A DNA stretch of 64,000 nt, from positions 83,197-147,196 of the forward strand of contig NIVC01001416.1 in NCBI GenBank assembly GCA_002269645.1, written 5' to 3'. Every line of letters begins with the position of its first letter. Position 1 is the first letter of the stretch. The DNA comes from Macrostomum lignano. Lineage: Eukaryota. A program made the translations under genes and the position numbers. The notes beneath the pieces are model-generated. The model had not been told where the DNA came from. It made no database searches and was given only the letters and a program-made list of their open reading frames with translations. Below, piece by piece: positions 1,828 to 63,618 of this stretch.

Positions 1828-1963
1828 TTAAGCACCATCCTTTGTGCCGACAACTTCTACATATTCTGAGCTTGTGGGAACAGCTGGTGTCACCACAATG
1901 GCATATTCATGGACACTGGCTCTCGCTGAGCTGCTGCTGGTGTCACCTGATGACTGCTGAGAC
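1828..1963 (-). CDS. A2 terminal exon (cytoplasmic, Tyr motifs HEYAIV and SEYVEV)
   Basis: Acceptor catactgcag|gtctc is phase 2, matching the upstream exon; reads VSQQSSGDT...SEYVEVVGTKDGA to TAA. Confidence 0.75.
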
Positions 1964-4900
1964 CTGCAGTATGATGGAGTGATGGAATGATGGAGAGAGA
2001 GGGGGTCATGTGCTGATGCTGTGATGTGGGTGATTGGGTGATGGGGTGGGTGATTGGGTGGGTGATTTGGTGAGATGGGGTGGGTGATGAGGTGGTTGAT
2101 GGGGTGGGTGATGGGGTGGTTGATGGGGTGGGTGATGGGGTGGTTGATGGGGTGGGTGATGCTGGTAACATACATGTGCGGAGGGTTCTAAACTTTATGA
2201 TATTTTCCAAGAAACCTACTATATAAAGATTATACAGAACTGGACAATGGTCCTTTAGGTGTAAACACAAAACTGTCAAAACTTACACGAGGTTTGAATC
2301 ATTTTTCAACGAGTTTCCTGACCGACGTTCCTTTTGAAGTCCTTGGTTGGACAATCCTTTCGAAATTTTCTCCATGGATGTCGACTGTTGATTCTGGTCG
2401 GTACGTCTGGAAAAGTTTTTGAAAAATGAAACTTTTCGCAATTAAACTGGTTAAATGAAAGCCACAGTTAGCTAAAATCTGGGATTGGTTTCCACAACAG
2501 GTTAAACATGGCCTTCCTCAATGGGATTCCTTGGTGCTTTATTTTTTATCGACTACAAAATAAAATTGATTCATCAAATTTTGCACACTCAAACTAACTA
2601 CTAACGACAGTGGTATCAGGGGGAAGGGCTTGCTTGCTGGCTTCCTCAGGGAATCCCAGTTATGAAAGGCCCCCAGTCAGAGAAATCCCTATCAGGGGAA
2701 CCCATGTCAGGGAAATCCACGTCAGGGGAACCCATATCAGGGGAATCCATGTCAGGGGAATCCCAGTAAGGGAAACCCTAGTTAAGGGAATCCCGGTCAG
2801 GGAAATACCAGTCAGAAGTATCCCAATCAGGGAGGGGGAGTCAGTGAAATCCCAGTTAGGGGAATACCAGTCAGGGGAATCCCAGACAGGGGAATCCCAG
2901 ACAGTGGAAATCCCAGCAGGGAAATTCCGGTCAGGGGAATCCCAGTAAGGGAAATCCCAGTAGGGCGAATCCCAGTCAGGGGATTTCCAGTCAGTGGAAT
3001 CCAATCAAAAGTCACGACAAGCCGTACCTGCTGCGCCTGCGGTGCCACACCCAGCCCAACAGGCCAGCCGCAATCGCCATGGCAACCAGCACCGACACCG
3101 CAACCGCCACCACGATGGTCATCGAGCCGCCGCCTCCGCCTCCGGTTGTGACGAATTTGAGCTGAGCTGGAGTTCCTGTGAGAGTCTGGCTCACGGGAAT
3201 CACCTTCACTGAGTACTCTGAGCCTGGCTGCAGGTGTTCCAGCCTCACTGTGTGTTGGGTGGAGCCGTTGCTAGGGGCGCCAGTCCGCATGGCAACCAGC
3301 GGATTGACAAGAGCGGAGCCGCACTCGGCAGCGAGTTCATTCAGCAGCTCATTGGTGCTGCAGTTGAGCAGCTGGCAGCCAGGAGCTGAGCTTGAGTTCA
3401 GCACCAGCATCTGGGAGCAGCCTGAGGATGAGTTCAGCACCTGGGGAGTTCGGGGAAATTCGCCTGTCTAGTGACTGACATTGGCAGATGCAGTTTCAAG
3501 CTGGATGCAACTTAAGGCTGCTGGAACACCTTGATGGGGCTTTTAGCAGCAGTTTGAGTTCTTAAGTTCTCAAGTTCACTTCTCTGTGCTCTCCATCTTT
3601 TTCTCATTCTCTCCCTCACTCCCTCACTCTCCATCACTCTCCATCACTCCGCATCACTCTCCCCATCACTCTCCCTAACAACTCTGTTATCTGTGGATCT
3701 CTATCGATCTCATCTCCTATAATGCATTTTACCCACCCATCAACCTCATCATAACAAACCATCTCTCCGCGCCTTCCTTTGGATCAGAGAATACGAAGAT
3801 CGGCATAAAAAGCCGAGAAAAAAATTGACAGAGCAAGCCATAAACAATTCAGTTTGTCATGCTAAATGGAACGATAAGCGAGAATAGAAGGCACGATTTG
3901 AGAGCTTTTCACAACAAGACGTATTCATTTTCTTCAGTCTGACCGACTAAAGCTATAATGGCACCGTGGATTTCATTTTTTGCAACATCTCATAAAGTGC
4001 AGAAATAACTCGCTACCAAAAGGAACCATTTGGCGGTAGCCGACATGGTTGAGGATGAGCTCAACTGAAGGTTCCACCTTGCAGCGAAAGAAGCGAAGAT
4101 TCATGAGACGAGGCAGTGGAAAAATATGCAAGCCTCTTCAACATGCAAACTTTTTAGGCAAAATCTGATTGGTTTTCAGCAACGACTTTTTCGGTTAGGA
4201 GCCAGATAATGAGAGGCACAGCGAGAGAGGCAATGCACAGTCAGTCAAGTCCTCCAAAGCTATCATAATCTACCCTGTTATCAACCATTAGCATAGCACT
4301 AAATGTGCACACTCAATTAAAGCGGTTGCTGCATAAGGAATAAAAATAACCCGGATACTGGCATACAGCTCAGATATCAATGCATGCGCACTGCTGCTTT
4401 CTTATCGATTCGCCAACTCCACACAAACAAAATCTGGCCAACCCAGAGCATCGTGCCGACTGTGTGAGAATCTCAACAGAAGGCGAGTCAGGACTGAAAC
4501 TCTGAGTGAGCAAAGGGTCTATGAAAATTCACTAATATCTGCCACTGGGTAACTTTTAGCATAAGTATAATGTGCTTGACAATGCCACTTAGGTCACTGC
4601 ATTGAGTCATCAGTCACTTCCTGTCCATGGGTTCCTCCGCTGTCCCTTCAGTCCCTCCGCTGCACCTTCAGTCCCTCCGCTGTCCCTTCAGTCCCTCCGC
4701 TGTCCCTTCAGTTCCTCCGCTGTCCCTTCAGTCCCTCCGATGTCCCTTCAGTCCCTCCGCTGCCCCTTCAGTCCCTCCGCTGCCCCTTCAGTCCCTCCGC
4801 TGTCCCTTCAGTCCCTCCGCTGTCCCTTCAGTCCCTCCGCTGCCCCTTCAGTCCCTCCGCTGTCCCTTCAGTCCCTCCGCTGTCCCTTCAGTCCCTCCGC

Positions 4901-7900
4901 TGCCCCTTCAGTGCCTCTCATGCCTCGCAATGGAGCTCCCAGTTGCAGGCGGCCTCACCTGCACAGCGAACGCCTGCAGCAGGCCGTTTGGCAGCCGCGG
5001 CTCCTCGAACTCCACCAGCGCCTCCGCCTCCGATGGCGTCGCCCGCAGACCACCGACGGCGCCGCTGCGAGTCTCCGGGCTGCGGAAGGAGGCGGAGGCG
5101 GCGGCACCGGGCCCCGCGAGGTTCACCGGCCACAGCGAGGCGCCGTACTCGGTCCAGGGCAGCAGCGAGCTCGGCGAGGCGCCCTCGGAGCTGACGGCGA
5201 CCTCCGCAGACAGCGAGGCGTCGCCGAACTCGAAGGTCCGCACGAGCACCGGCGCTGAGCAGTCGGCCGTCAGGGCCTCGAGCCGCTGCCGGGCCTCCTC
5301 CGACTGCAGCTGGAGGCGGTGGCGGCCGCAGTCGGAGCAGTTCAGCCGCCGGGCCGCCGCGCAGCCGCCCGGACCGTCCAGTCGCAGCTCGAACTCGAAC
5401 ACGACGCCCCGGCCGAGCTCGGGGCTGAGCGGCTTCCAGCTGAGGCGGACGGGACCGCCAGGGACCGCCAGCGGCTGCAGGCCGCCGGACACCGCGGGCG
5501 CCTCACCGTCGGGCAGCCGCCGCTCCGCCCTGTCACTGCCGCGGCTGCAGCCGCCGCCCGTGCAGGCGCCGACGCGGCAGAAGCCGACGTGGCCCGGCAG
5601 CGGCGGCGGCTCGAGCTGCAGGCGGGTCGTGTCGGCCGCCGCCTCCTTGGCTCCGACGCGAATCTCAGCGCCGTCCGGGAAGCTCAACGAGCCCCAGGCC
5701 ACCGAGTAGTTGCGGATGACGCCGTTCGGCTCGCTGGGAGCCCGCCAGTCGCATAGCAACTGCGATGACGCATCGTCCAGCCTCACCGACTGCGGCTGCG
5801 ACGGCGCGTCCTCCAGCGTTCGAACCTCCGACCTCTGGGGCAGCGAGGCCATGCCTGACAGCTCGGCGACCGCCTCCACCAAGTAGTTGGTGAACGGCCT
5901 CAGCGGCTGCAGAGCCACGGTGCACCTGCCGGAGTCCGGGCGGCAGCTGTTGGTAGCAGCAGCGAAGCTCCCGCTGTCTGCGTGGGCGGCCGCCGTCAGC
6001 AGCTCGGAGCCGGAGCTGGCAGTCAGCGACACCTCGACGGCGCGCCTGTCAGGCAGAAGCGACACCAAAGGGCGGCCGGGCGCTGCGGGACGGCGGCGGG
6101 GAAACCGGGCTCAGAACCAAGACTCACTCAGAACCAAGACTCACTCAGAACCAACACTCACTCAGAACCAACACTCACTCAGAACCAACACTCACTCAGA
6201 ACCAACACTCACTCAGAACCAAGACTCACTCAGAACCAAGACTCACTCAGAACCAAGACTCACTCAGAACCAAGACTCACTCAGAACTAAGACTCACTCA
6301 GAACCAACACTCACTCAGAACCAACACTCACTCAGAACCAACACTCACTCAGAACCAACACTCACTCAGAACCGACACTCACTCAGAACCAACACTCACT
6401 CAGAACCAAGACTCACTCAGAACCAACACTCACTCAGAACCAAGACTCACTCGGAACCAATACTCTCACACAACCAACACTCACTCAGAACCAACACTCA
6501 CTCAGAACCAACACTCACTCAGAACCAACACTCACTCAGAACCGACACTCACTCGGAACCAAGACTCACTCGGAAACAAGACTCACTCAGAACCAACACT
6601 CACTAAGAACCAAGACTCACTCAGAACCAAGACTCACTTAGAACCAACACTCACTCAGAACCAACACTCACTCACAACAAAGACTCTGAGCTGAACTCAC
6701 GCATCTGCAGCTGCTCAGCGATGACGATCTCCGAGCCCTCCTGCCTCAGCCCGGATTTGTTGGCCACGGCAGCCACCGCCACCGTCAGCTTCAGCGAGAG
6801 CAGCTCCGCCTCCGCCAGGCTCAGCAGCAGCCTCATCGAGTTGAACGCAGCCTCCCTCAGCAAGTCGGGCTTCGAGGCGCTGCTCACGCGGAACTGCAGC
6901 AGGTCGGCACCCTTGGCAGCGCTGGACGTCCAGTTGAGCAGCAGCACCGCCTCGGCGGGCTGCGACTCGCTCGGCTGCGACTCCGCGGCAGCGGCTGAGG
7001 GTCGGCTGGCGGGGTCCGCGATGAGCAACGGCCCTGGGGAGGGCGGGGAGATGGGAATTGAGATTGAGCGGAGTGACACTGTGAGCTGAGTGACACTGTG
7101 AGCGGAGTGAAATTGAGATGAGTGACAATGTCACCTGAGTGACACTGTGAGCTGAGTGACACTGTGAGCTGAGTGACACTGTGAGCTGAGCTGAGTGACA
7201 CTGTGAGCTGAGTGACACTGTGAGCTGAGTGACACTGTGAGCTGAGTGACACTGTGAGCTGAGTGACACTGTGAGCTGAGTGACACTGTGAGCTGAGTGA
7301 CACTGTGAGCAGAGTGACACTGTGAGCTGAGTGACACTGTGAGCTGAGTGACACTGTGAGCTGAGTGACACTGTGAGCTGAGTGACACTGTGAGCTGAGT
7401 GACAGCATGGGCTGCAGAGCTAGGAGGCAAGCAAAGAGGTGAAAGTATTTTTTAATGTATTACTAATACGTATTAAATATTGTTGAAGCTCACTGGTCAA
7501 AGCTGTACCATATATGTAAGCCCCGCTTGGAAACCCAGTCTTGACAGGTTTCACTGTGACAGTGACAGAGGCTCCGGATGGCTGGCCTGTGCACACAGCG
7601 GTTGTGTCTGGCACTCTGCCAGCGCAGCTCACTTCATACTCGACTCCGACATCGGGAGAGACCGCCCACCGGGCTCTGAAGCTCGTTTCCGTCACATCCG
7701 AGATGTGCACTGGTCCTGAGATATTGATGAGTGCTGAAATTGTGTTGGGACTTGCTCAACAGATGTTGTGAAGTTTCGCGAGCTGGTTTTGTATTTAAAA
7801 ATCATAAAAATAGTAATGAAGTCCATGAGATTTGCCCTCAGACGAAGTACATGACGAGTTTCGCCCGCAATGCTTTGCTTGCAAAGACTTGCTAAGCCTA

Positions 7901-10785: not shown

Positions 10786-10844
<59 letters not shown>

Positions 10845-18137: not shown

Positions 18138-20237
18138 TCCGAGTCCCTTGGGATTGGCTCTCATGGGTATTACTTGCACTACAGAATCCCGGCCACATTT
18201 TGAGAACGCAAACCTGAAATGATGTGGCTTGAAGTGGTGACTGACACGAAATATATCAGACTGCCTTCCTTAAAACATTTAATGAGACATTGCCTTTCTG
18301 TTATGACTTTGTAAATCGACTTAGCATTTTAATCAATCTTGTGAATACACCCACAAGAGGTTTGAAAAGCTTTCAGATAGCTATCAGGTAGCTTTGTAGA
18401 TAAATCTACTAAAAGAGCCTTCCAAACAAATCTACTTTTATGCAAACACAAGAAACGAAAAAAAACGCTGAAACCTTTTCATATTAGACATAATCATAAT
18501 TTAAATTGAAGATCGGTTATTAAATTTTTATTGAATAGTATAAAATTTGGAATCAATGACAAGAAGCAGTTTTAAGTCTGATTCATTTTTAAAATCAACC
18601 AACGAAGTCGAATAGACAATATTTTTGAAGTCTTGCAGTTGTGCTCCTCAACTGTCGCTCTTGCCTGTCTTCTTGCCGATGTAGCAGACGTGCAAAAACA
18701 GAATTCTTCGATCAAATCTGAAAAGGTAAAAACGTAGGAGATTTCGAAATTTTGTTATTTACGAAATATCTCTGCATAAGGCAATTGAATAGCTTTTCAT
18801 TGACCATACTCATAAATAGTGATTATCCCATTCAAAAATAAATTCACACGGTTTTTCACTCTTGGGTTAAACTTAAGGACTACTAAAGTCCAACGGTGCA
18901 AGGGTAACTTCTCAGTGATCCTGGGTTCAAATCTCTCAAGGGTCTGTAGGGGTGATAATTACTAGCTTCTGAATGTGAGATTGAAGCGTTGAAGCGTTCT
19001 TGAAGCAGAGATTCGAACTTGGGGTAGGCAGTAACTTTAAATCAATGTGTCATGCTGTTGAAACATTCGAATAGCATTATTAGGAAGCTCTATGTATACT
19101 ACTTTCTGGTTTTATCTTTAGTAGTATAAGCGACCTCCTACTGATATGATAGACGGTACATGTAAAATTATATATTATTCTTATTTCAACGACATACATT
19201 CCAAAATAATTATATTTACTGTAGGCATGATTACATTGCAAGTAGCAATTGTTACTTTGAAGAAGGGCTTTGAGCAATTCCCCAAAATCAAAGACCACAG
19301 AAGGCACGCAGTGGTTCATTATGGGTTCAGTAGTGGTTCAGAACAATCCTTCTGTGGACCACAGAAGACCACAGAAGGCACCCATTCACCTGCCCCAGTA
19401 CGCAGGCATGCAATCACAGAGGGTGTAAAGAGGACTTGACTTTATCACCGTCCTAAAACTGACCTGACGATTTTCATTTAAGATTCAATTCAGACTACTG
19501 AGAAAAGTAGACAAATAAAGATTTGAGTTGTAAAATTCCTCAAAAAGCCATTAAAGAACATCCTGCGCACACTAAGCTTGGCGGGAGAGAACGGTGTGTG
19601 GCTGTGGCTGACTGACGACAGACATTTTAGCGTGTCACAGTCAAGAAGTACACAGAAACTAAGAGCATTCCTACAGCTCGCTCACCGAGACAATCCGTGC
19701 AGACTTCTGGCCGGAAGAATGTCAGCATTGGGCGCCCATCTGCGGCATTCCTCTCGAGCTTGAGGAAAACTTCCTGGATAGATTTTCGTGTAGCACATCT
19801 GTAGGCTGGCACCGGGACCTCTGGAAATCGGCGACCAGGCGGCTGATGGACATCTGGTCCTGACGGTTTTCTCTTGAGCAGCATCAGCTGCATCATTCTT
19901 AGCTGTCTCCGGCTGCTGGACTCGCACTGGCGCCTTGCAAAAGTGAAAATGGCGCGCCTCAGGCTGGTAGGTGCGCCACAGCAGACGGGTCTCGGCGTCG
20001 ACCAGCAAGCCGAAGTTCATGGGCGGGCGGCTGGGACCGACAAGCCAGCTTCTGCAGTGCCGGCAGGAATGGAAATCACGCTTTAGTCAATCGTGAAGCA
20101 TTCACATGTAAGGCGTATGACCCAACTATGACAGAAGAGAGTGTTTGAATTCATGTCACACGGATTTGGGTTTCGGCCGGAAGGGATGGGGCTGCCTCAC
20201 AATCCCACTTCAGGGAAATGGGGCCTATGGTTCTGGC

Positions 20238-45067: not shown

Positions 45068-45476
45068 ATGTCTTCTGGCATGTCAGCTGGAATTCCACGA
45101 CTCTTTCACTGCAGTTGCTGCTGTTGGCTGCTTCTGGTTGCAGCTGCAGCTGCTCTGCTGCTGTGTGATGAGGCGGCTGCTCAAGGCACGTCATGTGGAA
45201 AACTGGTGCCGGGTCAGGTGGATCCTGTGACAGTGGCTGCTGTTCGCTCTGCCACAAATTCATCAATAACAGTTGATTGGCAGTCACCAGACAGTGGCAT
45301 CACAGGGTACTTTTACATAGTAAACTGCCCCAGCTGTCCCAGTCGGCAGCACAACACTACAGATGAGACATTCACATTTCGAGGTCTCACAGCGGCTACT
45401 GAGTACAACTTCTCAATTCAGGCAGGACTTCAGAACTGCAGACTCAGCCCTGCGTTCCATCTTTCTGGAAGGACAG
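45068..45476 (+). CDS. B exon 1: signal peptide + FN3
   Basis: ORF 45068..45568, donor acag|gtgaga. Confidence 0.85.
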
Positions 45477-54400: not shown

Positions 54401-57400
54401 TCAGTGAACCCCAACTCGGTCAGCTACTCAGCCAATGAGTCAGCCATCAGCGTGACCTGGGACGCCTCAGCCACCGGTGCTGGAGTTCACCACCAGCTGC
54501 GCTGCGTCAGCGGCTCAGACGGCTCAGTCGTGATCAGAAATGTCACCTCGCCTGAGCAGCGGCTCAGCGCCACCTGCGACTCCCTGCAGTCGGGCTCGAA
54601 GTTCAGCCTGCAGATTGTCGTGCTGAAGGTGGGCGGCTTCAAGCCCGCATTGGCGGAGGTGGGACAGCTGCTCACCTGTGAGTCTCGGGCGCCATTTTAA
54701 GTTTATCGATTGTTTTGGTGGAAGCCTAATGCCTTTTTAAAATGAATTAGTGGGATATTATTCTTTTAGATTTTCAGCACGAAAATTTACTATATGTAGA
54801 CTAGCCAGCCCCCCTCTAGGGCTAAGGGGCTTATTAAGTTGGGAACAAATTATATTTTCATTTTAACTCTAAATTAAAGTTTTTACGTGTAAAATTATGA
54901 AATTGTGTAAAATATAGAAAAGTTCTTCTTTAGGCATATCAGCATGTGTCCGTTGAGTCTCTGGCATCTCAGCATGTGTCCATTGAGTCTATGGCATCTC
55001 AGCATGTGTCCATTAAGTCTCTGGCACCTCAGCATGTGTCCATTGAGTCTCTGGCATCTCAGCATCTCTCCGTTAAGTCTGTTGCATCTCAGCATGTGTC
55101 CATTGAGTCTGTGGCATCTCAGCATCTCTGCATTAAGTCTGTGGCATCTCAGCATCTGTCCATTGAATATCTATGATTTGACAAAATACAAAAATAAAAG
55201 ATAGTTTTGCATATTGCTGTGATTAGTACGGCACTGTAACAGGTGCCCACTCTTGCCTTTTTGTATTTTGTTTTTTCTCATAAACCAGAATTATGTTATA
55301 AGTGCAGTAGTCCAGTCACACTGGCTTCAGTAAGAATTAGCTAACAACTATAATCAAAGTGCTCATGTACCAGTATGTACTGGCCTGTACAATCTTGAAA
55401 ATCTGGAATATTCCAGTTTTTCAGAGATTTTTCTTGTATTTTTTCCTGTCTAATAACTAAAACAAAGTTAGCAACGTAGGAAGCTCAATTAAAGTTTGAT
55501 AGCTGGCAGTATCACTGAGCTCACAGTGTCACTCAGCTCACGGTGTCACTCAGCTCACGGTGTCACTCAGCTCACAGTGTCACTCAGCTCACGGTGTCAC
55601 TCAGCTCACAGTGTCACTCAGCTCACAGTGTCACTCAGCTCACAGTGTCACTCAGCTTACAGTGTCACTCAGCTCACAGTGTCACTCAGCTCACAGTGTC
55701 ACTCAGCTCACAGTGTCACTCAGCTCACAGTGTCACTCAGCTCACAGTTTCACTCAGCTCACAGTGTCACTCAGCTCACAGTTTCACTCAGCTCACAGTG
55801 TCACTCAGCTCACAGTGGCACACAGCTCACAGTGTCACTCAGCTCAATCTCAATCCCCATCTCCCCACCCTTCTCAGGGCCGCTGCTCATCGCGGACCCC
55901 GCCAGCCGACCCTCAGCCGCTGCCGCGGTGTCGCATCCGAGCGAGTCGCTGCCCGCTGAGGCGGTGCTGCTGCTCAACTGGACGTCCAGCGCTGCCGCGG
56001 GCGCCGACCTGCTGCGGTTCCGCGTGAGCAGCGCCTCGAAGCCCGACTTGCTGAGGGAGGCTGCGTTCAACTCGATGAGGCTGCTGCTGAGCCTGGCGGA
56101 GACGGAGCTGCTCTCGCTGAAGCTGACGGTGGCGGTGGCTGCCGTGGCCAACAAATCCGGGCTGAGACAGGAGGGCTCGGAGATCGTCATCGCTGAGCAG
56201 CTGCAGATGCGTGAGTTCAGCTCAGAGTCTTTGTTGTGAGTGAGTCTTGGTTCTGAGTGAGTGTTGGTTCTGAGTGGGTCTTTGTTCTGAGTGAGTCTTG
56301 GTTCTGAGTGAGTCTTGGTTCTGAGTAAGTCTTGGTTCTGAGTGAGTGTCGGTTCTGAGTGAGTCTTGGTTCTGAGTGAGTGTTGGTTCTGAGTGAGTGT
56401 TGGTTCTGAGTGAGTGTTGGTTCTGAATGAGTGTTGGTTCTGAGTGAGTGTTGGTTCTGAGTGAGTGTTGGTTCTGAGTGAGTGTTTGTTCTGAGTGAGT
56501 CTTTGTTGTAAGTGAGTCTTTGTTCTGAGTGAGTGTTGGTTCTGAGTGAGTGTTGGTTCTGAGTGAGTGTTGGTTCTGAGTGAGTGTTGGTTCTGAGTGA
56601 GTGTTGGTTCTGAGTGAGTGTTGGTTCTGAGTGAGTGTTTGTTCTGAGTGAGTCTTTGTTGTAAGTGAGTCTTTGTTCTGAGTGAGTGTTGGTTCTGAGT
56701 GAGTGTTGGTTCTGAGTGAGTGTTGGTTCTGAGTGAGTGTTGGTTCTGAGTGAGTGTTGGTTCTGAGTGAGTCTTGGTTCTGAGTGAGTCTTGGTTCTGA
56801 GTGAGTGTTGGTTCTGAGTGAGTGTTGGTTCTGAGCCTGGTTTTTCCGCCTCCCGCAGCGCCCGGCCGCCCTTCGGTGTCGCTGCTGCCGGACAGGCGCG
56901 CCGTCGAGGTGTCGCTGACTGCCAGCTCCGGCTCCGAGCTGCTGACTGCGGCCGCCCACGCAGACAGCGGGAGCTTCGCTGCTGCTACCAACAGCTGCCG
57001 CCCGGACTCCGGCAGGTGCACCGTGGCTCTGCAGCCGCTGAGGCCGTTCACCAACTACTCGGTGGAGGCGGTCGCCGAGCTGTCGGGCCTGGCCTCGCTG
57101 CCCCAGAGGTCGGAGGTTCGAACGCTGGAGGACGCGCCGTCGCAGCCGCAGTCGGTGAGGCTGGACGATGCGTCATCGCAGTTGCTATGCGACTGGCGGG
57201 CTCCCAGCGAGCCGAACGGCGTCATCCGCAACTACTCGGTGGCCTGGGGCTCGCTGAGCTTCCCGGACGGCGCTGAGATTCGCGTCGGAGCCAAGGAGGC
57301 GGCGGCCGACACGACTCGCCTGCCGCTCGAGCCGCCGCCGCTGCCGGGCCACGTCGGCTTCTGCCGCGTCGGCGCCTGCACGGGCGGCGGCTGCAGCCGC

Positions 57401-60400
57401 GGCAGCGACAGGGCGGAGCGCCGGCTGCCCGACGGCGAAGCGCCCGCGGTGTCCGGCGGCTTGCAGCCGCTGGCGGTCCCTGGCGGTCCCGTCCGCCTCA
57501 GCTGGAAGCCGCTCAGCCCCGAGCTCGGCCGGGGCGTCGTGTTCGAGTTCGAGCTGCGACTGGACGGTCCGGGCGGCTGCGCGGCGGCCCGGCGGCTGAA
57601 CTGCTCCGACTGCGGCCGCCACCGCCTCCAGCTGCAGTCGGAGGAGGCCCGGCAGCGGCTCGAGGCCCTCACGGCCGACTGCTCAGCGCCGGTGCTCGTG
57701 CGGACCTTTAAGTTCGGCGACGCCTCGCTGTCCGCGGAGGTCGCCGTCAGCTCCGAGGGCGCCTCGCCGAACTCGCTGCTGCCCTTGACCGAGTACAGCG
57801 CCTCCCTGTGGCCGGTGAACCTCGCGGGGCCCGGCGCCGTCGCCTCCGCCTCCTTCCGCAGCCCGGAGACTCGCAGCGTCGCCGTCGGCGGCCTGCGGGC
57901 GACGCCCTCGGAGGCGGAGGCGCTGGTGGAGTTCGAGGAGCCGCGGCTGCCAAACGGCCTGCTGCAGGCCTTCGCTGTGCAGGTGAGGCCGCCTGTGCGA
58001 CTGGGAGCTCCTTTGCGGGCATGAGAGGCACTGAAGGGACAGCGGAGGGACTGAAGGGGCAGCGGAGGGACTGAAGGGACAGCGGAGGGACTGAAGGGAC
58101 GGCGGAGGGACTGAAGGGTCAGCGGAGGGACTGAAGGGACAGCGGAGGGACTGAAGGGACGGCGGAGGGACTGAAGGGACAGCGGAGGTACTGAAGGGGC
58201 AGTGGAGGGACTGAAGGGACAGCGGAGGGACTGAAGGGACAGCAGAGGGACTGAAGGGACAGCAGAGGTACTGAAGGGACAGCAGAGGGACTGAAGGGAC
58301 ACCGGAGGGACTGAAGAGACAGCAGAGGGACTGAAGGCACATCGGAGGGACTGAAGGGACAGCAGAGGGACTGAAGGGACACCGGAGGGACTGAAGGGAC
58401 AGCGGAGGTACTGAAGGGACAGCAGAGGGACTGAAGGGACACCGGAGGGACTGAAGAGACAGCAGAGGGACTGAAGGGACAGCGGAGGGACTGAAGGGAC
58501 AGCGGAGGGAGTGAAGGGACAGCGGAGGGAGTGAAGGGACAGCGGAGGCACTGAAGGGACAGCGGAGGCACTGAAGGGACAGCGGAGGGACTGAAGGGAC
58601 AGCGGAGGAACCCATGGACAGGAAGTGACTGATGACTCAATGCAGTGACCTAAGTGGCATTGTCAAGCGCATTATACTTATGGTAAAAGTTACCCAGTGG
58701 CAGATATTAGTGAATATTTTCATAGACCCTTTGCTCACTCAGAGTTTCAGTCCTGTCTCTCCTTCTGTTGAGATTCGCACACAGTCGGCACGATGCTCTG
58801 GGTTGGCCAGATTTTGTTTGTGTGGAGTTGGCGAGTCGATAAGAAAGCTGCAGTGCACATGCATTGATATCTGAGCTGTATGCCAGTATCCGGGTTATTT
58901 TTATTCCTTATGCAGCAACCGCTGTAATTGAGTGTACATATTCAGTGCTATGCTAATGGTTGGTAACAGGGTAGATTATGATAGCTTTGGAGGACTTGAC
59001 TGACTGTGCATTGCTTTTGTCGCTGTGCCTCTCATTATCTGGCTCCTAACCGAAAAAGTCGTTGCTGAAAACCAATCAGATTTTGCCTAAAAAGTTTGCA
59101 TGTTGAAGAGGCTTGCATATTTTTCCGCTGCCTCGTCTTATGAATCTTTACTTCTTTTGCTGCAAGGTGGAACCTTCAGTTGAGCTCATCCTCAACCATG
59201 TCGGCTACCGCCAAATGGTTCCTTTTAGTAGCGAGTTATTTCTGCACTTTATGAGATGTTGCAACAAATAAAATCCACGGTGCCATTATAGCTTTAGTCG
59301 GCCAGCCTGAAGAAAATGAATGCGTCTTGTTGTCTCTGTGAAAAGCTCTCAAATCGTGCCTTCTATTCTCGCTCATCCTTCCATTTAGCATGACAAACTG
59401 AATCTTCATTGCCTTGCTTTATCAAATATTTTTCTTGGCCAAGAGATAGATTGTGAGATTCATAGATAAAAGAGTTGTTAGGGAGGGAGTGTGATTGGGA
59501 GTTTTAGGGTGAGTGATGGGGATTGTGATCTAAGAGTGATAGGGACGGTGATTGGAGAGTGATGGAGAGGGTAATAGTGAGAGTGATGGGGAGAGTGATG
59601 GGGAGAATGATGGGAAAGTGGTGGGGAGAGTGATGGGAGACTGATAGAAGACTGGTGGGGAGAGTGATGAGGAGACGTACATGTATGTGAAGGGTGATGG
59701 CGAGAGTGATGGAGAGTGATAGGGAGAGTGATGGGGAGAGGATGGAGAGTGATGGGGAGTGATAGGGAGAGTGATGGGGAGAGTGATGGAGAGTGATGGA
59801 GAGTGATGGAGAGTGATGGAGAGTGATGGGGAGAGTGATGGAGAGTGATAGGTAGAGTGATGGGGAGAGTGATGGAGAGTGATAGGGAGAGTGATGGGGA
59901 GTGATAGGTAGAGTGATGGGGAGAGTGATGGAGAGTGATGGAGTGATGGGGAAAGTGATGGAGAGTGATGGAGAGTGATAGGTAGAGTGATGGGGAGAGT
60001 GATGGAGAGTGATAGGGAGAGTGATGGAGAGTGATCGAGAGTGATAGGGAGAGTGATGGGGAGTGATAGGTAGAGTGATGGGGAGAGTGATGGAGAGTGA
60101 TGGAGTGATGGGGAAAGTGATGGAGAGTGATGGAGAGTGATAGGTAGAGTGATGGGGAGAGTGATGGAGAGTGATAGGGAGAGTGATGGAGAGTGATCGA
60201 GAGTGATGGGAGAGTGATGGAGAGTGATGGGCAGTGATAGGGAGAGTGATGGAGAGAGTGATGGAGAGTGATGGAGAGTGATGGGGAGAGTGAAAAGGAG
60301 AGTGATGGGGAGAGTGATGGAGAGTGATAGGGAGAGTGATGGGGAGAGTGATGGAGAGTTATATGGAGAGTGATGGAGAGTGATGGAGAGTGATAGGTAG

Positions 60401-63400
60401 AGTTATGGGGAGAGTGATGGAGAGTGATGGGGAGAGTGATAAGGAGAGTGATAAGGAGAGTGATGCGGAGAGTGATAAAAAGAGTGATGGAGAGTGATGG
60501 AGTGATGAAGAGAGTGATAGGTAGAGTGATGGGGAGAGTGATGGAGAGTGATGGGGAGAGTGATAAAAAGAGTGATGGAGAGTGATGGAGTGATGAAGAG
60601 AGTGATAGGTAGAGTGATGGGGAGAGTGATGGAGAGTGATGGGGAGAGTGATAAAAAGAGTGATGGAGAGTGATGGAGTGATGAAGAGAGTGATAGGTAG
60701 AGTGATGGGGAGAGTGATGGAGAGTGATAAAAAGAGTGATGGAGAGTGATGGAGTGATAAAGAGAGTGATATGTAGAGTGATGGGGAGAGTGATGGAGAG
60801 TGATGGAGAGTGATGGGGAGAGTGATAAAAAGAGTGATAGAGAGTGATGGAGTGATGGGGAGTGATAAGAAGAGTGAGGGAGATTGATAAAGAGAGTGAT
60901 AAGGAAAGTGATGGGGAGTGGTTGCTAGAATAACTCGAGATGAAAGACAAACTATATGATGCGATATTGAAACGACGAAAAACGAAAAGCCTCTTGAGCG
61001 AGATGCTCTGGGTCGATATATTTTATGAGCTGAGTGAAAGCGTACAATACACGTGAGCGTAATGTGGGGTGGGGCGATCGGTGAAGAGTGAAATGGTGCG
61101 ATCAATAATTGGGGACTGTACGTATGAGAAAAATAAATATTCTAACCTAATGAACGTACATTTAGCTATTGCAAACGAACCCCAGACGCAAAGTACAAGA
61201 AATACCACGAGACAGTGGCAGCTCCAGAACAGGGAGAGTGATGGAGAGTAATGGGAAAAGTGATAAGAAAATTGAGGGAGAGTGATAAGGAGAGTGATAA
61301 GAAAAGTGAGGGAGATTGATAAAGAGAGTGATAGGGAGTGATGAAGAGTGATGGGGAGAGTGATAAGAAGAGTGAGGGAGAGTGATAATGAAAGTGATGG
61401 GGAGAGTGATAAGATGAGTGAGGGAGAGTGATAAGGAAAGTGAAAAGGCGAGTGATGGAAAGTGAGGGAGAGTGATGGGGAGTGGGGAGAGTGGGCGAGA
61501 GTGAGATAGATAGCAGATAGATAGATAGCAGAGATAGCACAGAGACGTGAACTGTAAGAGCTGAGCTGTTTAGTAAAACGCAGTCATAACTTGAGAACTC
61601 AAACTGCTGCTAAAAGCTCAAAGAGGTGTTCCAGCAGCCAATGTCAGTCACTAGGCAACCAAATCTCCATCCCCCAATTTCCCAGGTGCTGAACTCATCC
61701 TCAGGCTGCTCCCAGATGCTGGTGCTGAACTCAAGCTCAGCTCCTGGCTGCCAGCTGCTCAACTGCAGCACCGATGAGCTGCTGAAGGAACTCGCTGCTG
61801 AGTGCGGCTCCGCTGTTGTCAATCCACTGGTTGCTATGCAGACTGGCGGCCCTAGCAACGGCTCCACCCGACACACAGTGAGGCTGGAACACCTGCAGCC
61901 AGGCTCAGAGTACTCAGTGAAAGTGATTCCCGTGAGCCAGACTCTCAGAGGAACTCCAGCTCAGGTCAAATTCGCCACAACTGGAGGCGGAGGCGGCGGC
62001 GGCGGCGGCGGCTCGATGACTATCGTGGTGGCGGTTGCAGTGTCGGTGCTGGTTGCCATGGCGATTGCGGCTGGCCTGTTGGGCTTGGTGTGGTACCGCA
62101 GGCGCAGCAGGTACGGCTTGTCGTGATTTCTGATTAGCTGGTGGTTGTTTGGGCAAAAATTTCCCATTTGGTGAGGTGGTGGGCTGAGTCTGTAAGATGA
62201 CTCAGTTGTGTGCATCAGCCATCGCCCAAGGTGGCCGTTATAGGCAATAAATTCCGCATCAATCGAACTATACCCTCGATTAGATCGTAGTCTTTTTTCG
62301 TTATTTCTCATGTTGTTACTTTTAGTAGCCTAGTTAGTAGCGTGGTCAGGGCAGGAAAGTCCGGATGTATTTTTAGCTTTATTCGAATTTAATTTAATTT
62401 ATTTTATCGACTTTTATCGGAATTTCGCTGAACTGGATTCTACTGACTGGGATTTCCCTGACTGGGATTTCCCTGCCTGTGATTTGCCTGCCTGGAATTT
62501 TCTGAATGGGATTCTACTGACTGGGATTTCCCTGCCTGGGATTTTCCTGCCTGGGATTCTACTGACTGGAATTTTCTGAATGGGATTCTACTGACTGGAT
62601 TTCCCTGCCTGGGATTCCCCTAATTGGGATTTCCATGACTAGAATTCCTCTGTTTGGGGTTCCGATGACTGGGATTTCCTCGCTTGGAATTTCCATGACT
62701 TGGATTCACCTGTTTCAGATTCCCGTGACTGGGATTCCCTGTTTGAGATTCCCGTCACTGGGATTCCCCTGTTTGGTATTCCCATGACTGGGATTATCGT
62801 GTTTGAGATTCCCATGACTGGGATTCCCATGACTGGGATTCCCATGACTGGGATTTCCATGACTGGGATTCCCATGACTGGGATTTCCGTGTTTGGGATT
62901 CTTCTGTTTGGGATTCCCATAACTGGGATTCCCCTGTTTAGGATTCCCATTACTGGGATTTCCCTGATTGAGAATCCACTAACTGGCATTTCACTGGCTG
63001 GGATTCTACTGACTGGAATCCCCCGACTGATGTGGGGCACTGGGGAATTGAATCAGGATACAGAATATTGGGAATACATGTAATAGAATTGGAGATATCA
63101 ATTTAAATTTTTATAAAGTTAGTACATAAGAATTATCGATTTTTTACTTTTAAAACAAGTTAGCGTTTATTAACAATTCACTGCATTAGTATTAGCTAAA
63201 ACCAATATTAATTCTTTTGTTTAATTGTCGAACAATATAGGAAGGACTCCGTACTCATTGATGAAAATGATAAGCGATATAAGTACGTTTCGTGTGTAGA
63301 TAATGTGCTTTTTAATAAAGATTTTTCAATAAATTATATAATACAGATTTGGGCTTGAAAATGGTGTTCTATTACAATACGACTTTCAAATAAACAACCT

Positions 63401-63618
63401 ACATATCAAAGCTTTATAAACAATCAATATGCTGTATTCCTATTCATATTGTCAATTATAAAGCAGCTTTACATGGATCTTGATCTTGAAATAAACAAAT
63501 TTCCAGTCAACCAGACAGCCAAGAGCCAACGACATCCATGAGGGAAATTTCTAATGGCATTGCAAATCCCAGAACAGAGCAGAGCTGCAGACGTCTGTAC
63601 CGAAGATTCCTCTCAATG
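45068..63618 (+). CDS. Unit B: FN3-repeat type I membrane protein, 11 exons visible, 3' end probably beyond the window
   Basis: Exons 45068-45476, 45738-45977, 47906-48175, 50630-50896, 52956-53228, 53307-53576, 54393-54677, 55878-56210, 56859-57982, 61686-62110 and 63507-~63618; GT/AG boundaries with in-frame joins. Confidence 0.85.
45738..45977 (+). CDS. B exon 2 (240 nt)
   Basis: ttgcag acceptor and a|gtgagt donor. Confidence 0.85.
47906..48175 (+). CDS. B exon 3, FN3 (270 nt)
   Basis: ORF 47965..48276; phase 1-1. Confidence 0.85.
48334..50445. mobile_element. TIR element of unassigned superfamily in B intron 3
   Basis: Ends CAAGGATCACTAGCAGTTACCGTAGTATCAGGA / TCCTGATACAACGGTAACTTTAATAGTGGTCCTTG form a ~33-bp imperfect inverted repeat; no TSD recognised. 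Confidence 0.55.
49870..50099 (-). mobile_element. tRNA-derived SINE with a V/Meta-type conserved core
   Basis: Head GGTTGTAGCCAAGTAGTTAAAGCATCGGACTTACGA...GGTTCGATTCTC has A and B boxes but no CCA or acceptor-stem end; it is followed by CAGTTCACTCAGCTGTAAAATGGGTGCC, resembling the V/Meta-SINE core. Confidence 0.7.
50630..50896 (+). CDS. B exon 4, FN3 (267 nt; one Gly codon shorter than exon 3)
   Basis: ORF 50689..50952; phase 1-1. Confidence 0.85.
52135..52741. repeat. 29-bp minisatellite (gctcagggctcagcggagctggcatgact)
   Basis: About 21 units in B intron 4. Confidence 0.9.
52956..53228 (+). CDS. B exon 5, FN3 (273 nt)
   Basis: ORF 52910..53251; phase-1 acceptor aatgcag|cg. Confidence 0.85.
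53307..53576 (+). CDS. B exon 6, FN3 (270 nt)
   Basis: ORF 53366..53653; phase 1-1. Confidence 0.85.
54393..54677 (+). CDS. B exon 7, FN3 (285 nt; unique to B in this window)
   Basis: ESAISVTWDA...LQSGSKFSLQIVV; ccgcag acceptor and t|gtgagt donor. Confidence 0.85.
54938..55165. repeat. 30-bp minisatellite in B intron 7
   Basis: gcatctcagcatgtgtccattgagtctctg, about 7 units. Confidence 0.85.
55512..55845. repeat. 17-bp minisatellite upstream of B exon 8
   Basis: Reverse complement of the 7070-7404 array. Confidence 0.9.
55878..56210 (+). CDS. B exon 8 (333 nt)
   Basis: Paralog of 6701-7033. Confidence 0.8.
56236..56835. repeat. 17-bp minisatellite filling B intron 8
   Basis: gagtgagtgttggttct, about 35 units. 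Confidence 0.9.
56859..57982 (+). CDS. B exon 9, large FN3 exon (1124 nt)
   Basis: ORF 56822..58024; 9 aa differences from A2. Confidence 0.9.
58028..58608. repeat. 20-bp minisatellite at the start of B intron 9
   Basis: gggactgaagggacagcgga, about 29 units. Confidence 0.9.
59490..61505. repeat. Purine-rich GAGAGTGAT(G) satellite, two blocks (59490-60910 and 61232-61505)
   Basis: The equivalent A2 intron holds only a short seed at ~3600-3680. Confidence 0.9.
61686..62110 (+). CDS. B exon 10: FN3 half + Gly10 linker + TM
   Basis: ORF 61626..62126; TM IVVAVAVSVLVAMAIAAGLLGLVWY then RRRS. Confidence 0.85.
62430..63025. repeat. 15-bp degenerate array (gggattcccatgact)
   Basis: Related to 2660-3000. 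Confidence 0.85.
63507..63618 (+). CDS. B first cytoplasmic exon (3' boundary uncertain)
   Basis: tttccag phase-2 acceptor; QPDSQEPTTSMREISNGIAN aligns with A2 RTDQNQQSTSMEKISKGLSN; candidate donor atg|gtaatt. Confidence 0.6.

What the first reader, a model, noticed from the sequence alone, without database searches (positions are those of the whole stretch)
1828..63618. Divergent cluster of three paralogous FN3 receptors built from different combinations of phase-1 cassette exons
Seen: three copies of the signal-peptide exon and exon 2 start three units with different exon sets. Numbered by B, B = 1-11, A2 = 1,2,8,9,10,11,12 and A1 = 1,2,5,6 + C-type lectin. Every FN3 cassette is a symmetric phase 1-1 exon, so any can be gained, lost or skipped in frame. 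In exon 1, A2 vs B differ by about 11 non-synonymous and 12 synonymous changes (hand count), consistent with purifying selection. Knowledge: clustered, architecture-variable FN3/Ig receptors with Tyr-motif tails are typical of recognition systems such as Hydractinia Alr genes and vertebrate paired receptors. Inference: this may be an undescribed diversifying recognition (immune or self/non-self) receptor family in a flatworm-like animal, not a conventional usherin or RPTP.
Basis: partly seen in the sequence, partly recalled or inferred. Interest (0 to 1): 0.82.

Follow-up and report, generated by a model that had tools for sequence, protein, structure and literature searches.

The report
Flatworm phosphatase receptor gene with partial copies
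The three gene units are real, but the largest is the front part of an ordinary fibronectin-repeat receptor tyrosine phosphatase of the flatworm Macrostomum lignano, and the other two are neighbouring partial copies that reuse its outer-domain exons with different back ends.

Summary
The window is the last 64 kb of Macrostomum lignano contig NIVC01001416.1.

- **Unit B** is GenBank PAA68156.1 (partial). It is the 5' part of an R3-like receptor protein tyrosine phosphatase. Its catalytic exons lie just past the contig end and are present in a twin copy (PAA81091.1).
- **Unit A1** is GenBank PAA68155.1, a secreted protein with four FN3 domains and a divergent C-type-lectin-like domain. Its model rests on RNA data.
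- **Unit A2** is not annotated. It is an intact 923-aa membrane protein with seven FN3 domains and a short tail carrying two conserved tyrosine motifs.

A2's ectodomain exons are 91-97% identical to B's, but its juxtamembrane exon is almost unrelated. This points to a mosaic made by duplication or gene conversion.

All copies show purifying selection (dN/dS 0.2-0.4). One cassette type sits near 1, which is not significant. Related contigs show at least five exon architectures. No close relatives were found outside M. lignano.

This is a lineage-specific expansion of a known receptor kind. An immune or self/non-self role is untested.

The parts
45068..45476 (+). B exon 1: start codon, signal peptide and first FN3 domain; ends in phase 1
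   Evidence: Pfam fn3 3e-8. Donor ACAG|gtgaga. Identical to PAA68156.1 (P0010).
45738..45977 (+). B exon 2: FN3 cassette, 240 nt, phase 1-1
   Evidence: present in P0010.
47906..48175 (+). B exon 3: FN3 cassette, 270 nt, phase 1-1; E3/4/6 type
   Evidence: It is 96% identical to E6 and 91% to E4.
50630..50896 (+). B exon 4: FN3 cassette, 267 nt, phase 1-1
52956..53228 (+). B exon 5: FN3 cassette, 273 nt, phase 1-1
   Evidence: Pfam fn3 3e-7.
53307..53576 (+). B exon 6: FN3 cassette, 270 nt, phase 1-1
54393..54677 (+). B exon 7: FN3 cassette, 285 nt, phase 1-1
   Evidence: Weak Pfam fn3 hit, 1.4e-3.
55878..56210 (+). B exon 8: FN3-like cassette, 333 nt, phase 1-1; preceded by a 17-nt minisatellite
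   Evidence: No Pfam hit for this exon alone.
56859..57982 (+). B exon 9: 1124 nt, phase 1 to 0; three FN3 domains plus the first half of a fourth
   Evidence: Open frame, present in P0010 and P0007.
61686..62110 (+). B exon 10: second half of the last FN3 domain, a Gly run, the transmembrane helix and RRRS; phase 0 to 2
   Evidence: Hydrophobic stretch SMTIVVAVAVSVLVAMAIAAGLLGLVW followed by YRRR.
63507..63618 (+). B exon 11: juxtamembrane exon. It is 5 nt shorter than in the twin copy, which shifts the frame; this is probably a contig-end sequencing error. The PTP exons lie beyond base 64000.
25790..26186 (-). A1 exon 1: signal peptide and FN3 domain
   Evidence: Identical to PAA68155.1 (P0013).
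25296..25535 (-). A1 exon 2: FN3 cassette, phase 1-1
22945..23217 (-). A1 copy of the E5 cassette
   Evidence: 92% identical to B E5.
22595..22864 (-). A1 copy of the E6 cassette
   Evidence: 96% identical to B E6.
21881..22220 (-). A1 lectin exon 1: N-terminal two thirds of a C-type-lectin-like domain; phase 1 to 2
   Evidence: The acceptor at 22220 is taken from the annotated protein P0013. All 19 PDB phmmer hits are CTLDs. 61-71% identical to Lectin_C-positive repeats of P0113.
19686..20051 (-). A1 lectin exon 2: C-terminal strands of the CTLD, a linker and the start of a second, truncated CTLD; phase 2-2
18648..18717 (-). A1 last exon: 22 codons and the stop codon; no transmembrane segment
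8261..8666 (-). A2 exon 1: ATG at 8666, signal peptide and FN3 domain
7494..7733 (-). A2 exon 2: FN3 cassette
6701..7033 (-). A2 copy of E8. It follows E2 directly; 9.5 kb present in B (45997-55512, carrying E3-E7) is absent here.
4959..6082 (-). A2 copy of E9, 97.3% identical to B
   Evidence: Identical over 274 aa to A0A1I8JF17, a protein from an independent assembly.
3028..3440 (-). A2 copy of E10, with the transmembrane helix
2287..2406 (-). A2 juxtamembrane exon E11': 120 nt, phase 2-2. Only a weak relative of B E11 (STSMEKIS versus TTSMREIS).
   Evidence: The two are reciprocal best tblastn hits, E 0.07-0.2.
1828..1963 (-). A2 exon 12: Ser-rich cytoplasmic tail with EYAIVV...SSEYVEV, then the stop codon
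   Evidence: Aligns with the tail of PAA75074.1 (shuffle p = 0.006).

Best explanation
**What is shown.** The window is the terminal 64 kb of M. lignano contig NIVC01001416.1. It holds a local gene cluster built around a receptor protein tyrosine phosphatase of the R3 kind: an ectodomain made only of FN3 repeats, one transmembrane helix and one PTP domain.

- **B** is that phosphatase gene. It has about 12 FN3 modules in 10 exons. A minisatellite that ends the contig cuts it off before its catalytic exons.
- **A1** lies head-to-head with B, with a Mic10 gene between them. It reuses E1, E2, E5 and E6 and then splices into two C-type-lectin-like exons and a short last exon. The product is a secreted FN3x4-CTLD protein.
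- **A2** reuses E1, E2, E8, E9 and E10. It therefore has seven FN3 domains and the same transmembrane helix. It ends in its own juxtamembrane exon and a tail with two tyrosine motifs, and it has no phosphatase domain.

**How the units arose (inferred).** The likely route is segmental duplication, unequal recombination between near-identical cassettes or their flanking minisatellites, and gene conversion. The single-domain cassettes E2-E8 are all phase 1-1 and divisible by 3, so any loss, gain or skipping of them keeps the reading frame. A2 is a mosaic. Its E8-E9 differs from B by 2.8%, its E1-E2 by about 9.5%, and its juxtamembrane exon by about 54%.

**Function (inferred).**
- B would work like other R3 phosphatases, as a cell-surface receptor that removes phosphotyrosine from nearby signalling proteins.
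- A2-type proteins would present nearly the same outer face but carry phosphorylatable docking tyrosines instead.
- A1 would be a soluble form carrying a lectin-like head.
For: **Identity of the window.** L003 equals window 35116-64000 at 100%, and the contig ends at base 64000.

**B.**
- B equals PAA68156.1.
- Its twin PAA81091.1 on L001 is 99.8% identical over window 48607-63933 and carries Y_phosphatase at 232 bits.
- The best single-domain PDB hits of that domain are PTPRB 187, VE-PTP 174, PTPRJ 173.5 and PTPRH 168 bits.

**A1.** A1 equals PAA68155.1 on the same contig, with copies on two other contigs. The GenBank models come from a genome-guided RNA-seq transcriptome (PMC5730564).

**Gene structure.** Splice sites, phases and open frames were checked.

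**Selection.**
- A2 versus B gives dN/dS of 0.18-0.64 per exon.
- A2 versus the A2-type copy 3 of L002 gives 0.22, p = 4e-7.
- A1 versus its L002 copy gives 0.39, p = 0.0045, with the lectin exons at 0.13-0.14.

**Mosaic divergence.**

**Other architectures.**
- PAA75074.1 has E1, 2, 3, 4, 5, 6, 9b, 10', 12'.
- L002 copies 3 and 4 are A2-type.
- PAA81091.1 is modelled with E2 joined to E8.

**Tail.** The tail motif is conserved between diverged tails.

**Independent support for A2.** A2 matches a protein from an independent assembly at 100%.
Against: - A2 has no annotated transcript. Neither my 883-aa A2 model (without E11') nor a near-identical cluster member is in the protein collection, so its expression and its E10-E11'-E12 splicing are unproven. 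The 923-aa model was not looked up.
- The PTP exons of B are not in the window. In the window, B's E11 is frameshifted by 5 missing bases. I attribute this to contig-end errors, because 22 of the 28 differences from the twin fall in the last 900 nt and most are 1-nt deletions. A real lesion in this copy cannot be excluded.
- The R3 C-terminal YxN-hydrophobic motif is absent from PAA81091.1.
- The assignment to R3 rests on bit scores, not on a phylogeny.
- E8 and several modules of E9 are called FN3 from pattern and position only. Both AlphaFold runs failed (pLDDT 34 and 37).
- All functional statements are inference.
Confidence: 0.8

Rival explanations
1. The cluster would be a new, diversifying immune or self/non-self recognition receptor family, comparable to Hydractinia Alr or vertebrate paired receptors, and not an RPTP.
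For: - The family is multi-copy, with at least five exon architectures.
- Amino-acid variation clusters in a few loop-like patches of E2, E3/4/6 and E5.
- Pooled dN/dS of the E5-type cassette is 1.19.
- Tyr-motif tails are present.
- No close homologues were found outside M. lignano.
Against: - B is an RPTP.
- Most exons have dN/dS of 0.2-0.7, and the E5 excess rests on 16.5 versus 3.5 changes and is not significant.
- There are no polymorphism, expression or ligand data.
- The domains are FN3, not the Ig-like domains of Alr.
- M. lignano is a sexually reproducing, non-colonial worm, with no known fusion or allorecognition biology (my own knowledge).
Confidence: 0.1
2. A2, and perhaps A1, would be functionless by-products of the very active segmental duplication in this genome. 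They would be truncated copies of the phosphatase gene that merely still look intact.
For: - The M. lignano DV1 assembly has 180 Mb of duplicated blocks at 95% identity or more, and many tandem repeats (PMC5730564).
- A2 is not annotated.
- The upstream regions of A1, A2 and B share no similarity, so the duplicates did not bring a promoter with them.
- A1 ends in a truncated second CTLD.
Against: - All 7 A2 exons and all 7 A1 exons keep open frames and canonical splice sites.
- dN/dS between two A2-type genes is 0.22 (p = 4e-7). For the A1 lectin exons it is 0.13-0.14.
- A1 has an RNA-based gene model on three contigs.
- The dual-Tyr motif is kept between tails that have otherwise diverged.
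Confidence: 0.12
3. The three units would be an assembly artefact: haplotypes or homeologues of one gene wrongly stitched side by side.
For: - The assembly is redundant.
- The last 15 kb of the window is a near-duplicate of another contig.
- The last 900 nt are error-rich.
Against: - The units differ in orientation, exon content, 3' exons and flanking DNA, and there are no Ns.
- The order A1-Mic10-B recurs on NIVC01000551.1. An A1-like gene followed by tandem copies recurs on NIVC01000905.1.
- A2-specific and B-specific protein fragments exist in the independent ML2-based proteome.
Confidence: 0.03

Closest known systems
R3-subtype receptor protein tyrosine phosphatases (vertebrate PTPRB/VE-PTP, PTPRJ/DEP-1, PTPRH, PTPRO; Drosophila Ptp10D/Ptp4E; C. 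elegans DEP-1)
   Same: Unit B and its twin have an ectodomain made only of FN3 repeats, mostly one repeat per phase-1 exon. They also have one transmembrane helix and one catalytic domain with the KNRY, WxD and HCSAGVGRTG motifs. The best single-domain PDB matches are R3 members. There are weak Pfam hits to the DEP-1-type FN3 models.
   Different: - There is no C-terminal YxN-hydrophobic motif.
- The WPD loop reads WED.
- Several FN3 domains carry Cys-rich insertions.
- The ectodomain has no close relative outside M. lignano: 23-31% identity to anything else.
- The gene sits in a cluster of partial paralogues without a phosphatase domain. I do not know of this for R3 genes elsewhere.
Vertebrate paired receptors (for example SIRP alpha/beta, KIR, PILR); an analogy of logic only
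   Same: Neighbouring paralogues have ectodomains kept 91-97% alike but different signalling ends: a phosphatase in B and Tyr docking motifs in A2. The cytoplasmic exons are anciently diverged, which suggests ectodomain homogenisation.
   Different: - The domains are FN3, not Ig or lectin.
- There is no charged transmembrane residue and no known adaptor.
- The motifs are only ITIM/ITAM-like.
- No ligand, polymorphism or immune context is known.
- This is not a homologous family.
C-type-lectin-like domain proteins, most closely the M. lignano multi-CTLD mucin-like proteins A0A1I8HKP4 and A0A1I8GUY7
   Same: The two lectin exons of A1 are 61-71% identical to the CTLD repeats of A0A1I8HKP4, which pass Pfam Lectin_C. 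A1 keeps the C...W..F.G.CY start, a WTGL (WIGL-like) motif and the F.CK end.
   Different: - A1's own domain scores below Pfam's reporting level.
- The inner Cys pair is missing.
- The EPN/QPD and WND sugar/Ca2+ motifs are missing.
- The domain is fused behind four RPTP-type FN3 cassettes.
Exon shuffling of class 1-1 extracellular modules (Patthy's rule; fibronectin and tenascin FN3 exons)
   Same: The single-domain FN3 cassettes E2-E8 are symmetric phase 1-1 exons. They are gained, lost and duplicated in frame among paralogues.
   Different: This is the expected state for FN3 modules, so it is not a special property of the locus. In addition, E9 has lost all internal introns.
Hydractinia Alr allorecognition genes
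   Same: Clustered type I membrane proteins with variable domain number and ITIM/ITAM-like tails.
   Different: Alr ectodomains are Ig-like, the genes are hyperpolymorphic, and they act in colony fusion. None of this is shown here, and there is no sequence relationship.

Membership tests
R3-subtype receptor PTP | Ectodomain composed solely of FN3 repeats | tested here: met
   Pfam finds only fn3 and Fn3_Dep-1-type models on B, P0010 and P0007. There are about 12 modules by exon periodicity. E8 and parts of E9 are called FN3 by pattern only.
R3-subtype receptor PTP | Single-pass type I membrane topology | tested here: met
   Read directly from the sequence. There is an N-terminal hydrophobic signal (WLLLVAAAAALLL) and one 27-residue hydrophobic stretch followed by YRRR in E10. 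No dedicated predictor was run.
R3-subtype receptor PTP | One intracellular PTP domain with an HCX5R active site | tested here: met
   Met on the twin copy PAA81091.1: Y_phosphatase 9.5e-69, one domain, HCSAGVGRTG. In the window itself these exons lie beyond the contig end. A1 and A2 have no PTP domain and are not members.
R3-subtype receptor PTP | Catalytic domain groups with R3 members | tested here: inconclusive
   The best single-domain PDB scores are PTPRB 187, VE-PTP 174, PTPRJ 173.5 and PTPRH 168 bits. This compares with PTPN4 166, PTPRA-D1 158 and PTPRS-D1 155. The margin is small and no tree was built.
R3-subtype receptor PTP | C-terminal YxN-hydrophobic Src-SH2 docking motif | tested here: not met
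   The C-terminus of PAA81091.1 reads ...NDPVYVRATSATTAAGRDNEAFDATNEA, with no YxN motif.
Paired / ITIM-ITAM immunoreceptors (functional class) | Paralogues with near-identical ectodomains but different signalling tails | tested here: met
   A2 versus B: E8+E9 differ by 2.8%, E1 and E2 by 9.4-9.6%, and E10 is 93% identical. The juxtamembrane exon differs by 54% and the ends differ in kind, Tyr tail versus PTP.
Paired / ITIM-ITAM immunoreceptors (functional class) | Canonical ITIM [SIVL]xYxx[IVL] or ITAM Yxx[LI]x6-12Yxx[LI] | tested here: inconclusive
   A2's SSEYVEV fits the ITIM pattern, but the aligned SAEYVEI of PAA75074.1 does not. The spacing of the two tyrosines is ITAM-like (10 and 9 residues between motifs), but position +3 is Val in three of the four motifs.
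Paired / ITIM-ITAM immunoreceptors (functional class) | Tyrosine phosphorylation and recruitment of SH2 proteins | not testable with these tools
   Needs biochemistry.
C-type-lectin-like domain (CTLD) superfamily | Matches the Pfam Lectin_C model | tested here: not met
   No Lectin_C hit for A1's lectin exons or for P0013, even at E of 1 or less.
C-type-lectin-like domain (CTLD) superfamily | Homology to bona fide CTLDs | tested here: met
   The region is 61-71% identical (E 5e-87 and 2e-83) to two repeats of A0A1I8HKP4, one of which passes Lectin_C at 49 bits. All 19 PDB phmmer hits are CTLDs (DEC-205 4.5e-7, CLEC4D 5e-3).
C-type-lectin-like domain (CTLD) superfamily | Ca2+/carbohydrate motifs (EPN or QPD, and WND) and both disulfides | tested here: not met
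   Read from the sequence. There is no EPN/QPD or WND. The outer Cys pair is present, and the inner pair is replaced (...NFGLLVDAE...WRTYQPE...).
Hydractinia Alr family | Ig-like (V-set-like) ectodomains and extreme allelic polymorphism | tested here: not met
   There are no Ig-type Pfam hits, only FN3. Polymorphism cannot be tested here.
Usherin | LamG-like, laminin N-terminal and laminin-EGF domains ahead of the FN3 arrays | tested here: not met
   None of these domains is found in B, A1, A2 or their annotated relatives.

The most novel reading that the evidence does not exclude
The cluster would be a flatworm-specific paired-receptor module built on an RPTP scaffold. In it, a phosphatase receptor (B) and membrane paralogues with dual-tyrosine docking tails (A2 type) would have ectodomains kept alike by gene conversion. 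A secreted FN3-lectin form (A1) would complete the set. All three would recognise the same ligand and give opposite or modulating outputs. Shuffling of FN3 cassettes among copies would tune what is recognised.
Probability: 0.15. Interest if true: 0.7.

Novelty: new variant of a known kind. Interest (0 to 1): 0.4.

Why it matters
If the picture holds, it is a clean natural example of one receptor phosphatase gene spawning three kinds of product: a catalytic receptor, a docking-tail receptor and a secreted lectin fusion. They arise by in-frame reuse of phase-1 FN3 exons, and gene conversion keeps the outer faces alike while the signalling ends differ.

M. lignano is transgenic and RNAi-tractable, so the idea can be tested directly.

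There is also a practical lesson for users of the Mlig_3_7 annotation:
- PAA68156.1 is a truncated RPTP, not an FN3-only protein.
- A2 and a Mic10 gene are missing from this contig's annotation.
- The contig end is error-rich.

The finding does not in itself show a new immune or self-recognition system.

Tried and rejected
- **AlphaFold2.** I ran it on the A1 lectin region and on B exon 9, both as single sequences. It gave pLDDT 34 and 37, so I did no fold searches.
- **Homologue search with the lectin exon.** The search for homologous proteins returned nothing, although the exact sequence is in PAA68155.1. This was a false negative of the word index.
- **Homologue search with full-length B.** It returned one hit only.
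- **Exact look-up.** My first A1 model (657 aa), A2 model (883 aa) and the Mic10 ORF were not in the collection. A1 differed by one acceptor, 22238 versus the RNA-supported 22220.
- **A 'missing exon 10'.** At first I thought one lay between E9 and the TM exon. There is no coding ORF there.
- **A2 splicing.** I first joined A2's E10 directly to the Tyr tail.
- **Intergenic ORFs.** Pfam on 13 intergenic or intronic ORFs gave nothing.
- **Literature.** Searches for the locus tags, for flatworm RPTPs and for Macrostomum allorecognition found nothing relevant.
- **A2 tail exon elsewhere.** I looked for a hidden alternative copy in B or its twin and found none.

Full report
**1. Where the window comes from**

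Protein searches hit only Macrostomum lignano. The locus fetched for PAA68156.1 (L003) equals window 35116-64000 at 100%, and the contig stops at window base 64000. The window is therefore the last 64,000 bp of GenBank contig NIVC01001416.1, from assembly Mlig_3_7 (GCA_002269645.1). It contains no Ns. It ends inside a 31-nt minisatellite at 63656-64000.

**2. Checking the observation**

Self-BLASTN shows three copies of exon 1 plus exon 2, at 88-90% identity. It also shows long collinear matches between A2 (minus strand) and two separate parts of B, and between A1 (minus strand) and two other parts of B.

I defined every exon by its open frame, its AG/GT sites and its phase.

| Unit | Strand | Exons (window coordinates) |
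|---|---|---|
| B | + | E1 45068-45476, E2 45738-45977, E3 47906-48175, E4 50630-50896, E5 52956-53228, E6 53307-53576, E7 54393-54677, E8 55878-56210, E9 56859-57982, E10 (TM) 61686-62110, E11 (juxtamembrane) 63507-63618 |
| A2 | - | E1 8666-8261, E2 7733-7494, E8 7033-6701, E9 6082-4959, E10 3440-3028, E11' 2406-2287, E12 1963-1828 |
| A1 | - | E1 26186-25790, E2 25535-25296, E5 23217-22945, E6 22864-22595, lectin exon 1 22220-21881, lectin exon 2 20051-19686, last exon 18717-18648 |

- E2-E8 are 240-333 nt, all divisible by 3, and all phase 1-1.
- 'Every FN3 cassette' overstates the case. E9 (1124 nt, phase 1 to 0) encodes about three and a half FN3 domains without introns. The last domain is split by a phase-0 intron. 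E10 is phase 0 to 2, and E11 is phase 2-2.
- In exon 1, A2 and B differ by 21.5 non-synonymous and 18.5 synonymous changes, not about 11 and 12. The ratio dN/dS = 0.36 leads to the same conclusion.

**3. What unit B is**

- My B model is identical to GenBank PAA68156.1 (BOX15_Mlig015983g1, 'partial', 1310 aa).
- A second contig, NIVC01000551.1 (L001), is 99.8% identical to window 48607-63933 and 84-96% identical further upstream. Its gene PAA81091.1 (1238 aa) continues about 0.4 kb beyond the point where the window ends. It runs into a single protein tyrosine phosphatase domain: Pfam Y_phosphatase 9.5e-69, with motifs NREKNRY, WEDHAVP, HCSAGVGRTG and QTKHQY.
- Against PDB sequences, the best single-domain matches are PTPRB (187 bits), VE-PTP (174), PTPRJ (173.5) and PTPRH (168). 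These are ahead of PTPN4, PTPRZ/G and D1 of PTPRA/S.
- With an all-FN3 ectodomain, one TM helix and one PTP domain, B is an R3-like receptor PTP. The R3 C-terminal YxN motif is absent.
- In the window, B's E11 is 5 nt shorter than in L001, which shifts the frame. However, 22 of the 28 differences between the two contigs lie in the last 900 nt of the window, and most are single missing bases. I read these as contig-end errors.

**4. What unit A1 is**

- The representative search returned P0013, which is PAA68155.1 (BOX15_Mlig022912g1, 651 aa) on the same 147,196-bp contig.
- It is identical to my A1 model except that the lectin exon's acceptor is 18 nt further on (22220).
- Two more copies are annotated on the L001 and L002 contigs: PAA81093.1 and PAA75075.1.
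- According to PMC5730564, the GenBank models derive from a genome-guided RNA-seq transcriptome. A1's splicing from FN3 exon 6 into the lectin exons therefore has RNA support.
- The protein has a signal peptide, four FN3 domains and no TM segment.
- Pfam does not detect Lectin_C in it. However, all 19 PDB phmmer hits are C-type-lectin-like domains. The region is also 61-71% identical (E 5e-87) to the repeats of A0A1I8HKP4, which pass Lectin_C at 49 bits.
- It is a divergent CTLD that lacks the inner disulfide and the sugar/Ca2+ motifs. A truncated second CTLD follows it.

**5. What unit A2 is**

- A2 is not in the protein collection. The 883-aa model without E11' was looked up and not found, and no near-identical cluster member exists. 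The 923-aa model was not looked up.
- A fragment from the independent ML2-based proteome (A0A1I8JF17) is 100% identical to A2 over 274 aa, against 96% to B.
- The 923-aa model has a signal peptide, seven FN3 domains, the same TM helix as B and a juxtamembrane exon.
- Its Ser-rich tail ends ...VHEYAIVVTPAVPTSSEYVEVVGTKDGA.
- The tail aligns with the otherwise diverged tail of PAA75074.1 (...NDYATVVGGSAQSAEYVEIP...; shuffle p = 0.006). Both tyrosines line up.
- Compared with B, A2 lacks 9.5 kb (B 45997-55512) that carries E3-E7.

**6. History of the copies**

- Divergence between A2 and B is strongly uneven. It is 2.8% in E8+E9 (dS 0.05-0.07), about 9.5% in E1 and E2 (dS about 0.2), 6-12% in introns, and about 54% in the juxtamembrane exon. 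In that exon only STSMEKIS versus TTSMREIS remains, as reciprocal weak tblastn hits.
- Similarity stops at a minisatellite after E10. It also stops right at the start codon upstream, and the promoters share nothing.
- A2 is therefore a mosaic: an old short-tail 3' end joined to, or converted by, a B-like ectodomain region.
- Contig NIVC01000905.1 (L002) is collinear with the window's minus strand from A1 to A2 at 88-97% identity. It carries four tandem copies:
  - an A1-type gene;
  - PAA75074.1, with E1, 2, 3, 4, 5, 6, the second half of E9, E10' and E12';
  - an A2-type gene with a PAA75074-like tail;
  - the start of a fourth copy, matching A0A1I8HND4, also A2-type.
- The gene at A2's position there has a different exon set. 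This indicates unequal recombination within the array.
- PAA81091.1 is modelled with E2 spliced to E8 although E3-E7 are intact in its DNA, while PAA68156.1 includes them. This is either real block-skipping or cross-mapping of A2-type reads, and I cannot tell which.

**7. Selection**

- Comparisons within one gene type avoid the problem that B alone might carry the constraint.
- A2 versus L002 copy 3 (E8+E9) gives dN/dS 0.22, p = 4e-7.
- A1 versus L002 copy 1 gives 0.39, p = 0.0045. The lectin exons are at 0.13-0.14, and E5 is at 1.68 (16.5 versus 3.5 changes, not significant).
- Pooled over all copies, the ratio is 0.56 for E3/4/6-type cassettes, 0.71 for E2 and 1.19 for the E5 type. Substitutions are concentrated in a few loop-like patches.
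- All three gene types are therefore maintained by selection. Diversifying selection is neither shown nor excluded for some loops.

**8. Spread of the family**

- A full HMMER scan of 1.84 billion representatives with PAA75074.1 found only six hits below 1e-30, and all are M. lignano.
- The next hits are generic FN3 arrays at 23-31% identity. They include a bacterial FN3 protein, a tenascin-X-like protein and a PTPRJ(eta)-like protein.
- There is also one unnamed 960-aa metagenome protein with a similar Cys-rich FN3, a TM helix and a short tail.
- A more distant M. lignano branch (A0A1I8JDX3, 46% identity) also combines E1/E2-like FN3 domains with CTLD repeats. The FN3-lectin architecture is therefore older than the present near-identity of A1 and B.
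- I found no paper that mentions these genes.

**9. How it most likely works**

*Shown:*
- the gene structures;
- the RPTP identity of B through its twin copy;
- the RNA-based model of A1;
- the intactness of all three units and the constraint on them;
- the mosaic pattern of divergence.

*Inferred:*
- B acts like other R3 phosphatases, as a cell-surface regulator of phosphotyrosine signalling.
- A2-type proteins show nearly the same outer face but offer two phosphorylatable tyrosines as docking sites.
- A1 is a soluble form with a lectin-like head.
- Symmetric phase-1 exons and flanking minisatellites make in-frame rearrangement easy.

A 'paired receptor' reading is attractive but rests only on analogy.

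**10. Verdict**

This is a lineage-specific, architecture-variable expansion of a known receptor kind (an R3-like RPTP). It is already partly annotated and is not shown to be an immune or self-recognition system. Interest is moderate.

Noticed in passing
window 42946-43230 (+): An intronless 94-aa ORF matches Pfam DUF543 (the Mic10 subunit of the mitochondrial MICOS complex) at 2e-21. It lies between A1 and B. The same gene is called on the twin contig (L001 7976-8248), but it is not among the called genes for this contig, and its exact sequence is not in the protein collection.
   Followed up: partly
window 63101-64000: 22 of the 28 differences from the otherwise identical contig NIVC01000551.1 fall in the last 900 nt. 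Most are single missing bases, including 5 nt within B's exon 11. This looks like an unpolished contig end, and it makes the annotated C-terminus of PAA68156.1 (...PRTEQSC) wrong.
   Followed up: yes
window 592-1145, 4634-4917, 6110-6686, 7065-7404, 9501-9769, 20238-21644, 26978-28356, 28824-30436, 43440-44116, 52190-52742, 55507-55846, 56225-56835, 58025-58608, 59507-60920, 62435-63029, 63656-64000: Minisatellites are very dense, with periods of 12-34 nt and up to 128 copies. They occur in most introns and intergenic spacers. Several sit at the same intron positions in A2 and B (the 17-nt arrays on both sides of E8 and the 20-nt array after E9). Duplication breakpoints coincide with them.
   Followed up: partly
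window 10730-16412: This 5.7 kb between A1 and A2 has no counterpart in the collinear contig NIVC01000905.1 (L002 7735-7986). It is probably an insertion or a repeat-rich spacer. ORFs there gave no Pfam hits.
   Followed up: partly
L001 10001-31085 compared with window 45068-63618: Two annotated models of near-identical loci differ. PAA81091.1 joins E2 directly to E8, while PAA68156.1 includes E3-E7. This is either alternative skipping of a five-exon block or reads from A2-type genes assigned to the wrong copy.
   Followed up: partly
window 36931-48616 compared with L001 1108-12575: The two contigs are 99.8% identical downstream of window 48607 but only 84-96% identical upstream. There is a sharp switch that suggests haplotype or homeologue switching, or a recent conversion tract, within B's intron 3.
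   Followed up: no
P0020 (JGI metagenome contig, 3258 bp): An unnamed 960-aa protein from a metagenome is 31% identical to the E9b-E10 part of the family. It shares the Cys-rich FN3 insertions, a weak PTP_tm hit, a TM helix and a short tail. It may be the nearest relative outside M. lignano, but its organism is unknown.
   Followed up: no
window 24518-25072 (+), inside A1 intron 2: A 184-aa ORF contains a C..C..GK...KPF pattern reminiscent of retrotransposon gag-pre-integrase regions. Pfam gave no hit, so this is unverified.
   Followed up: partly
tool behaviour: The word-indexed protein search found no homologue for the A1 lectin exon, although PAA68155.1 contains it exactly. A negative result from that tool on short queries should not be trusted.
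   Followed up: yes
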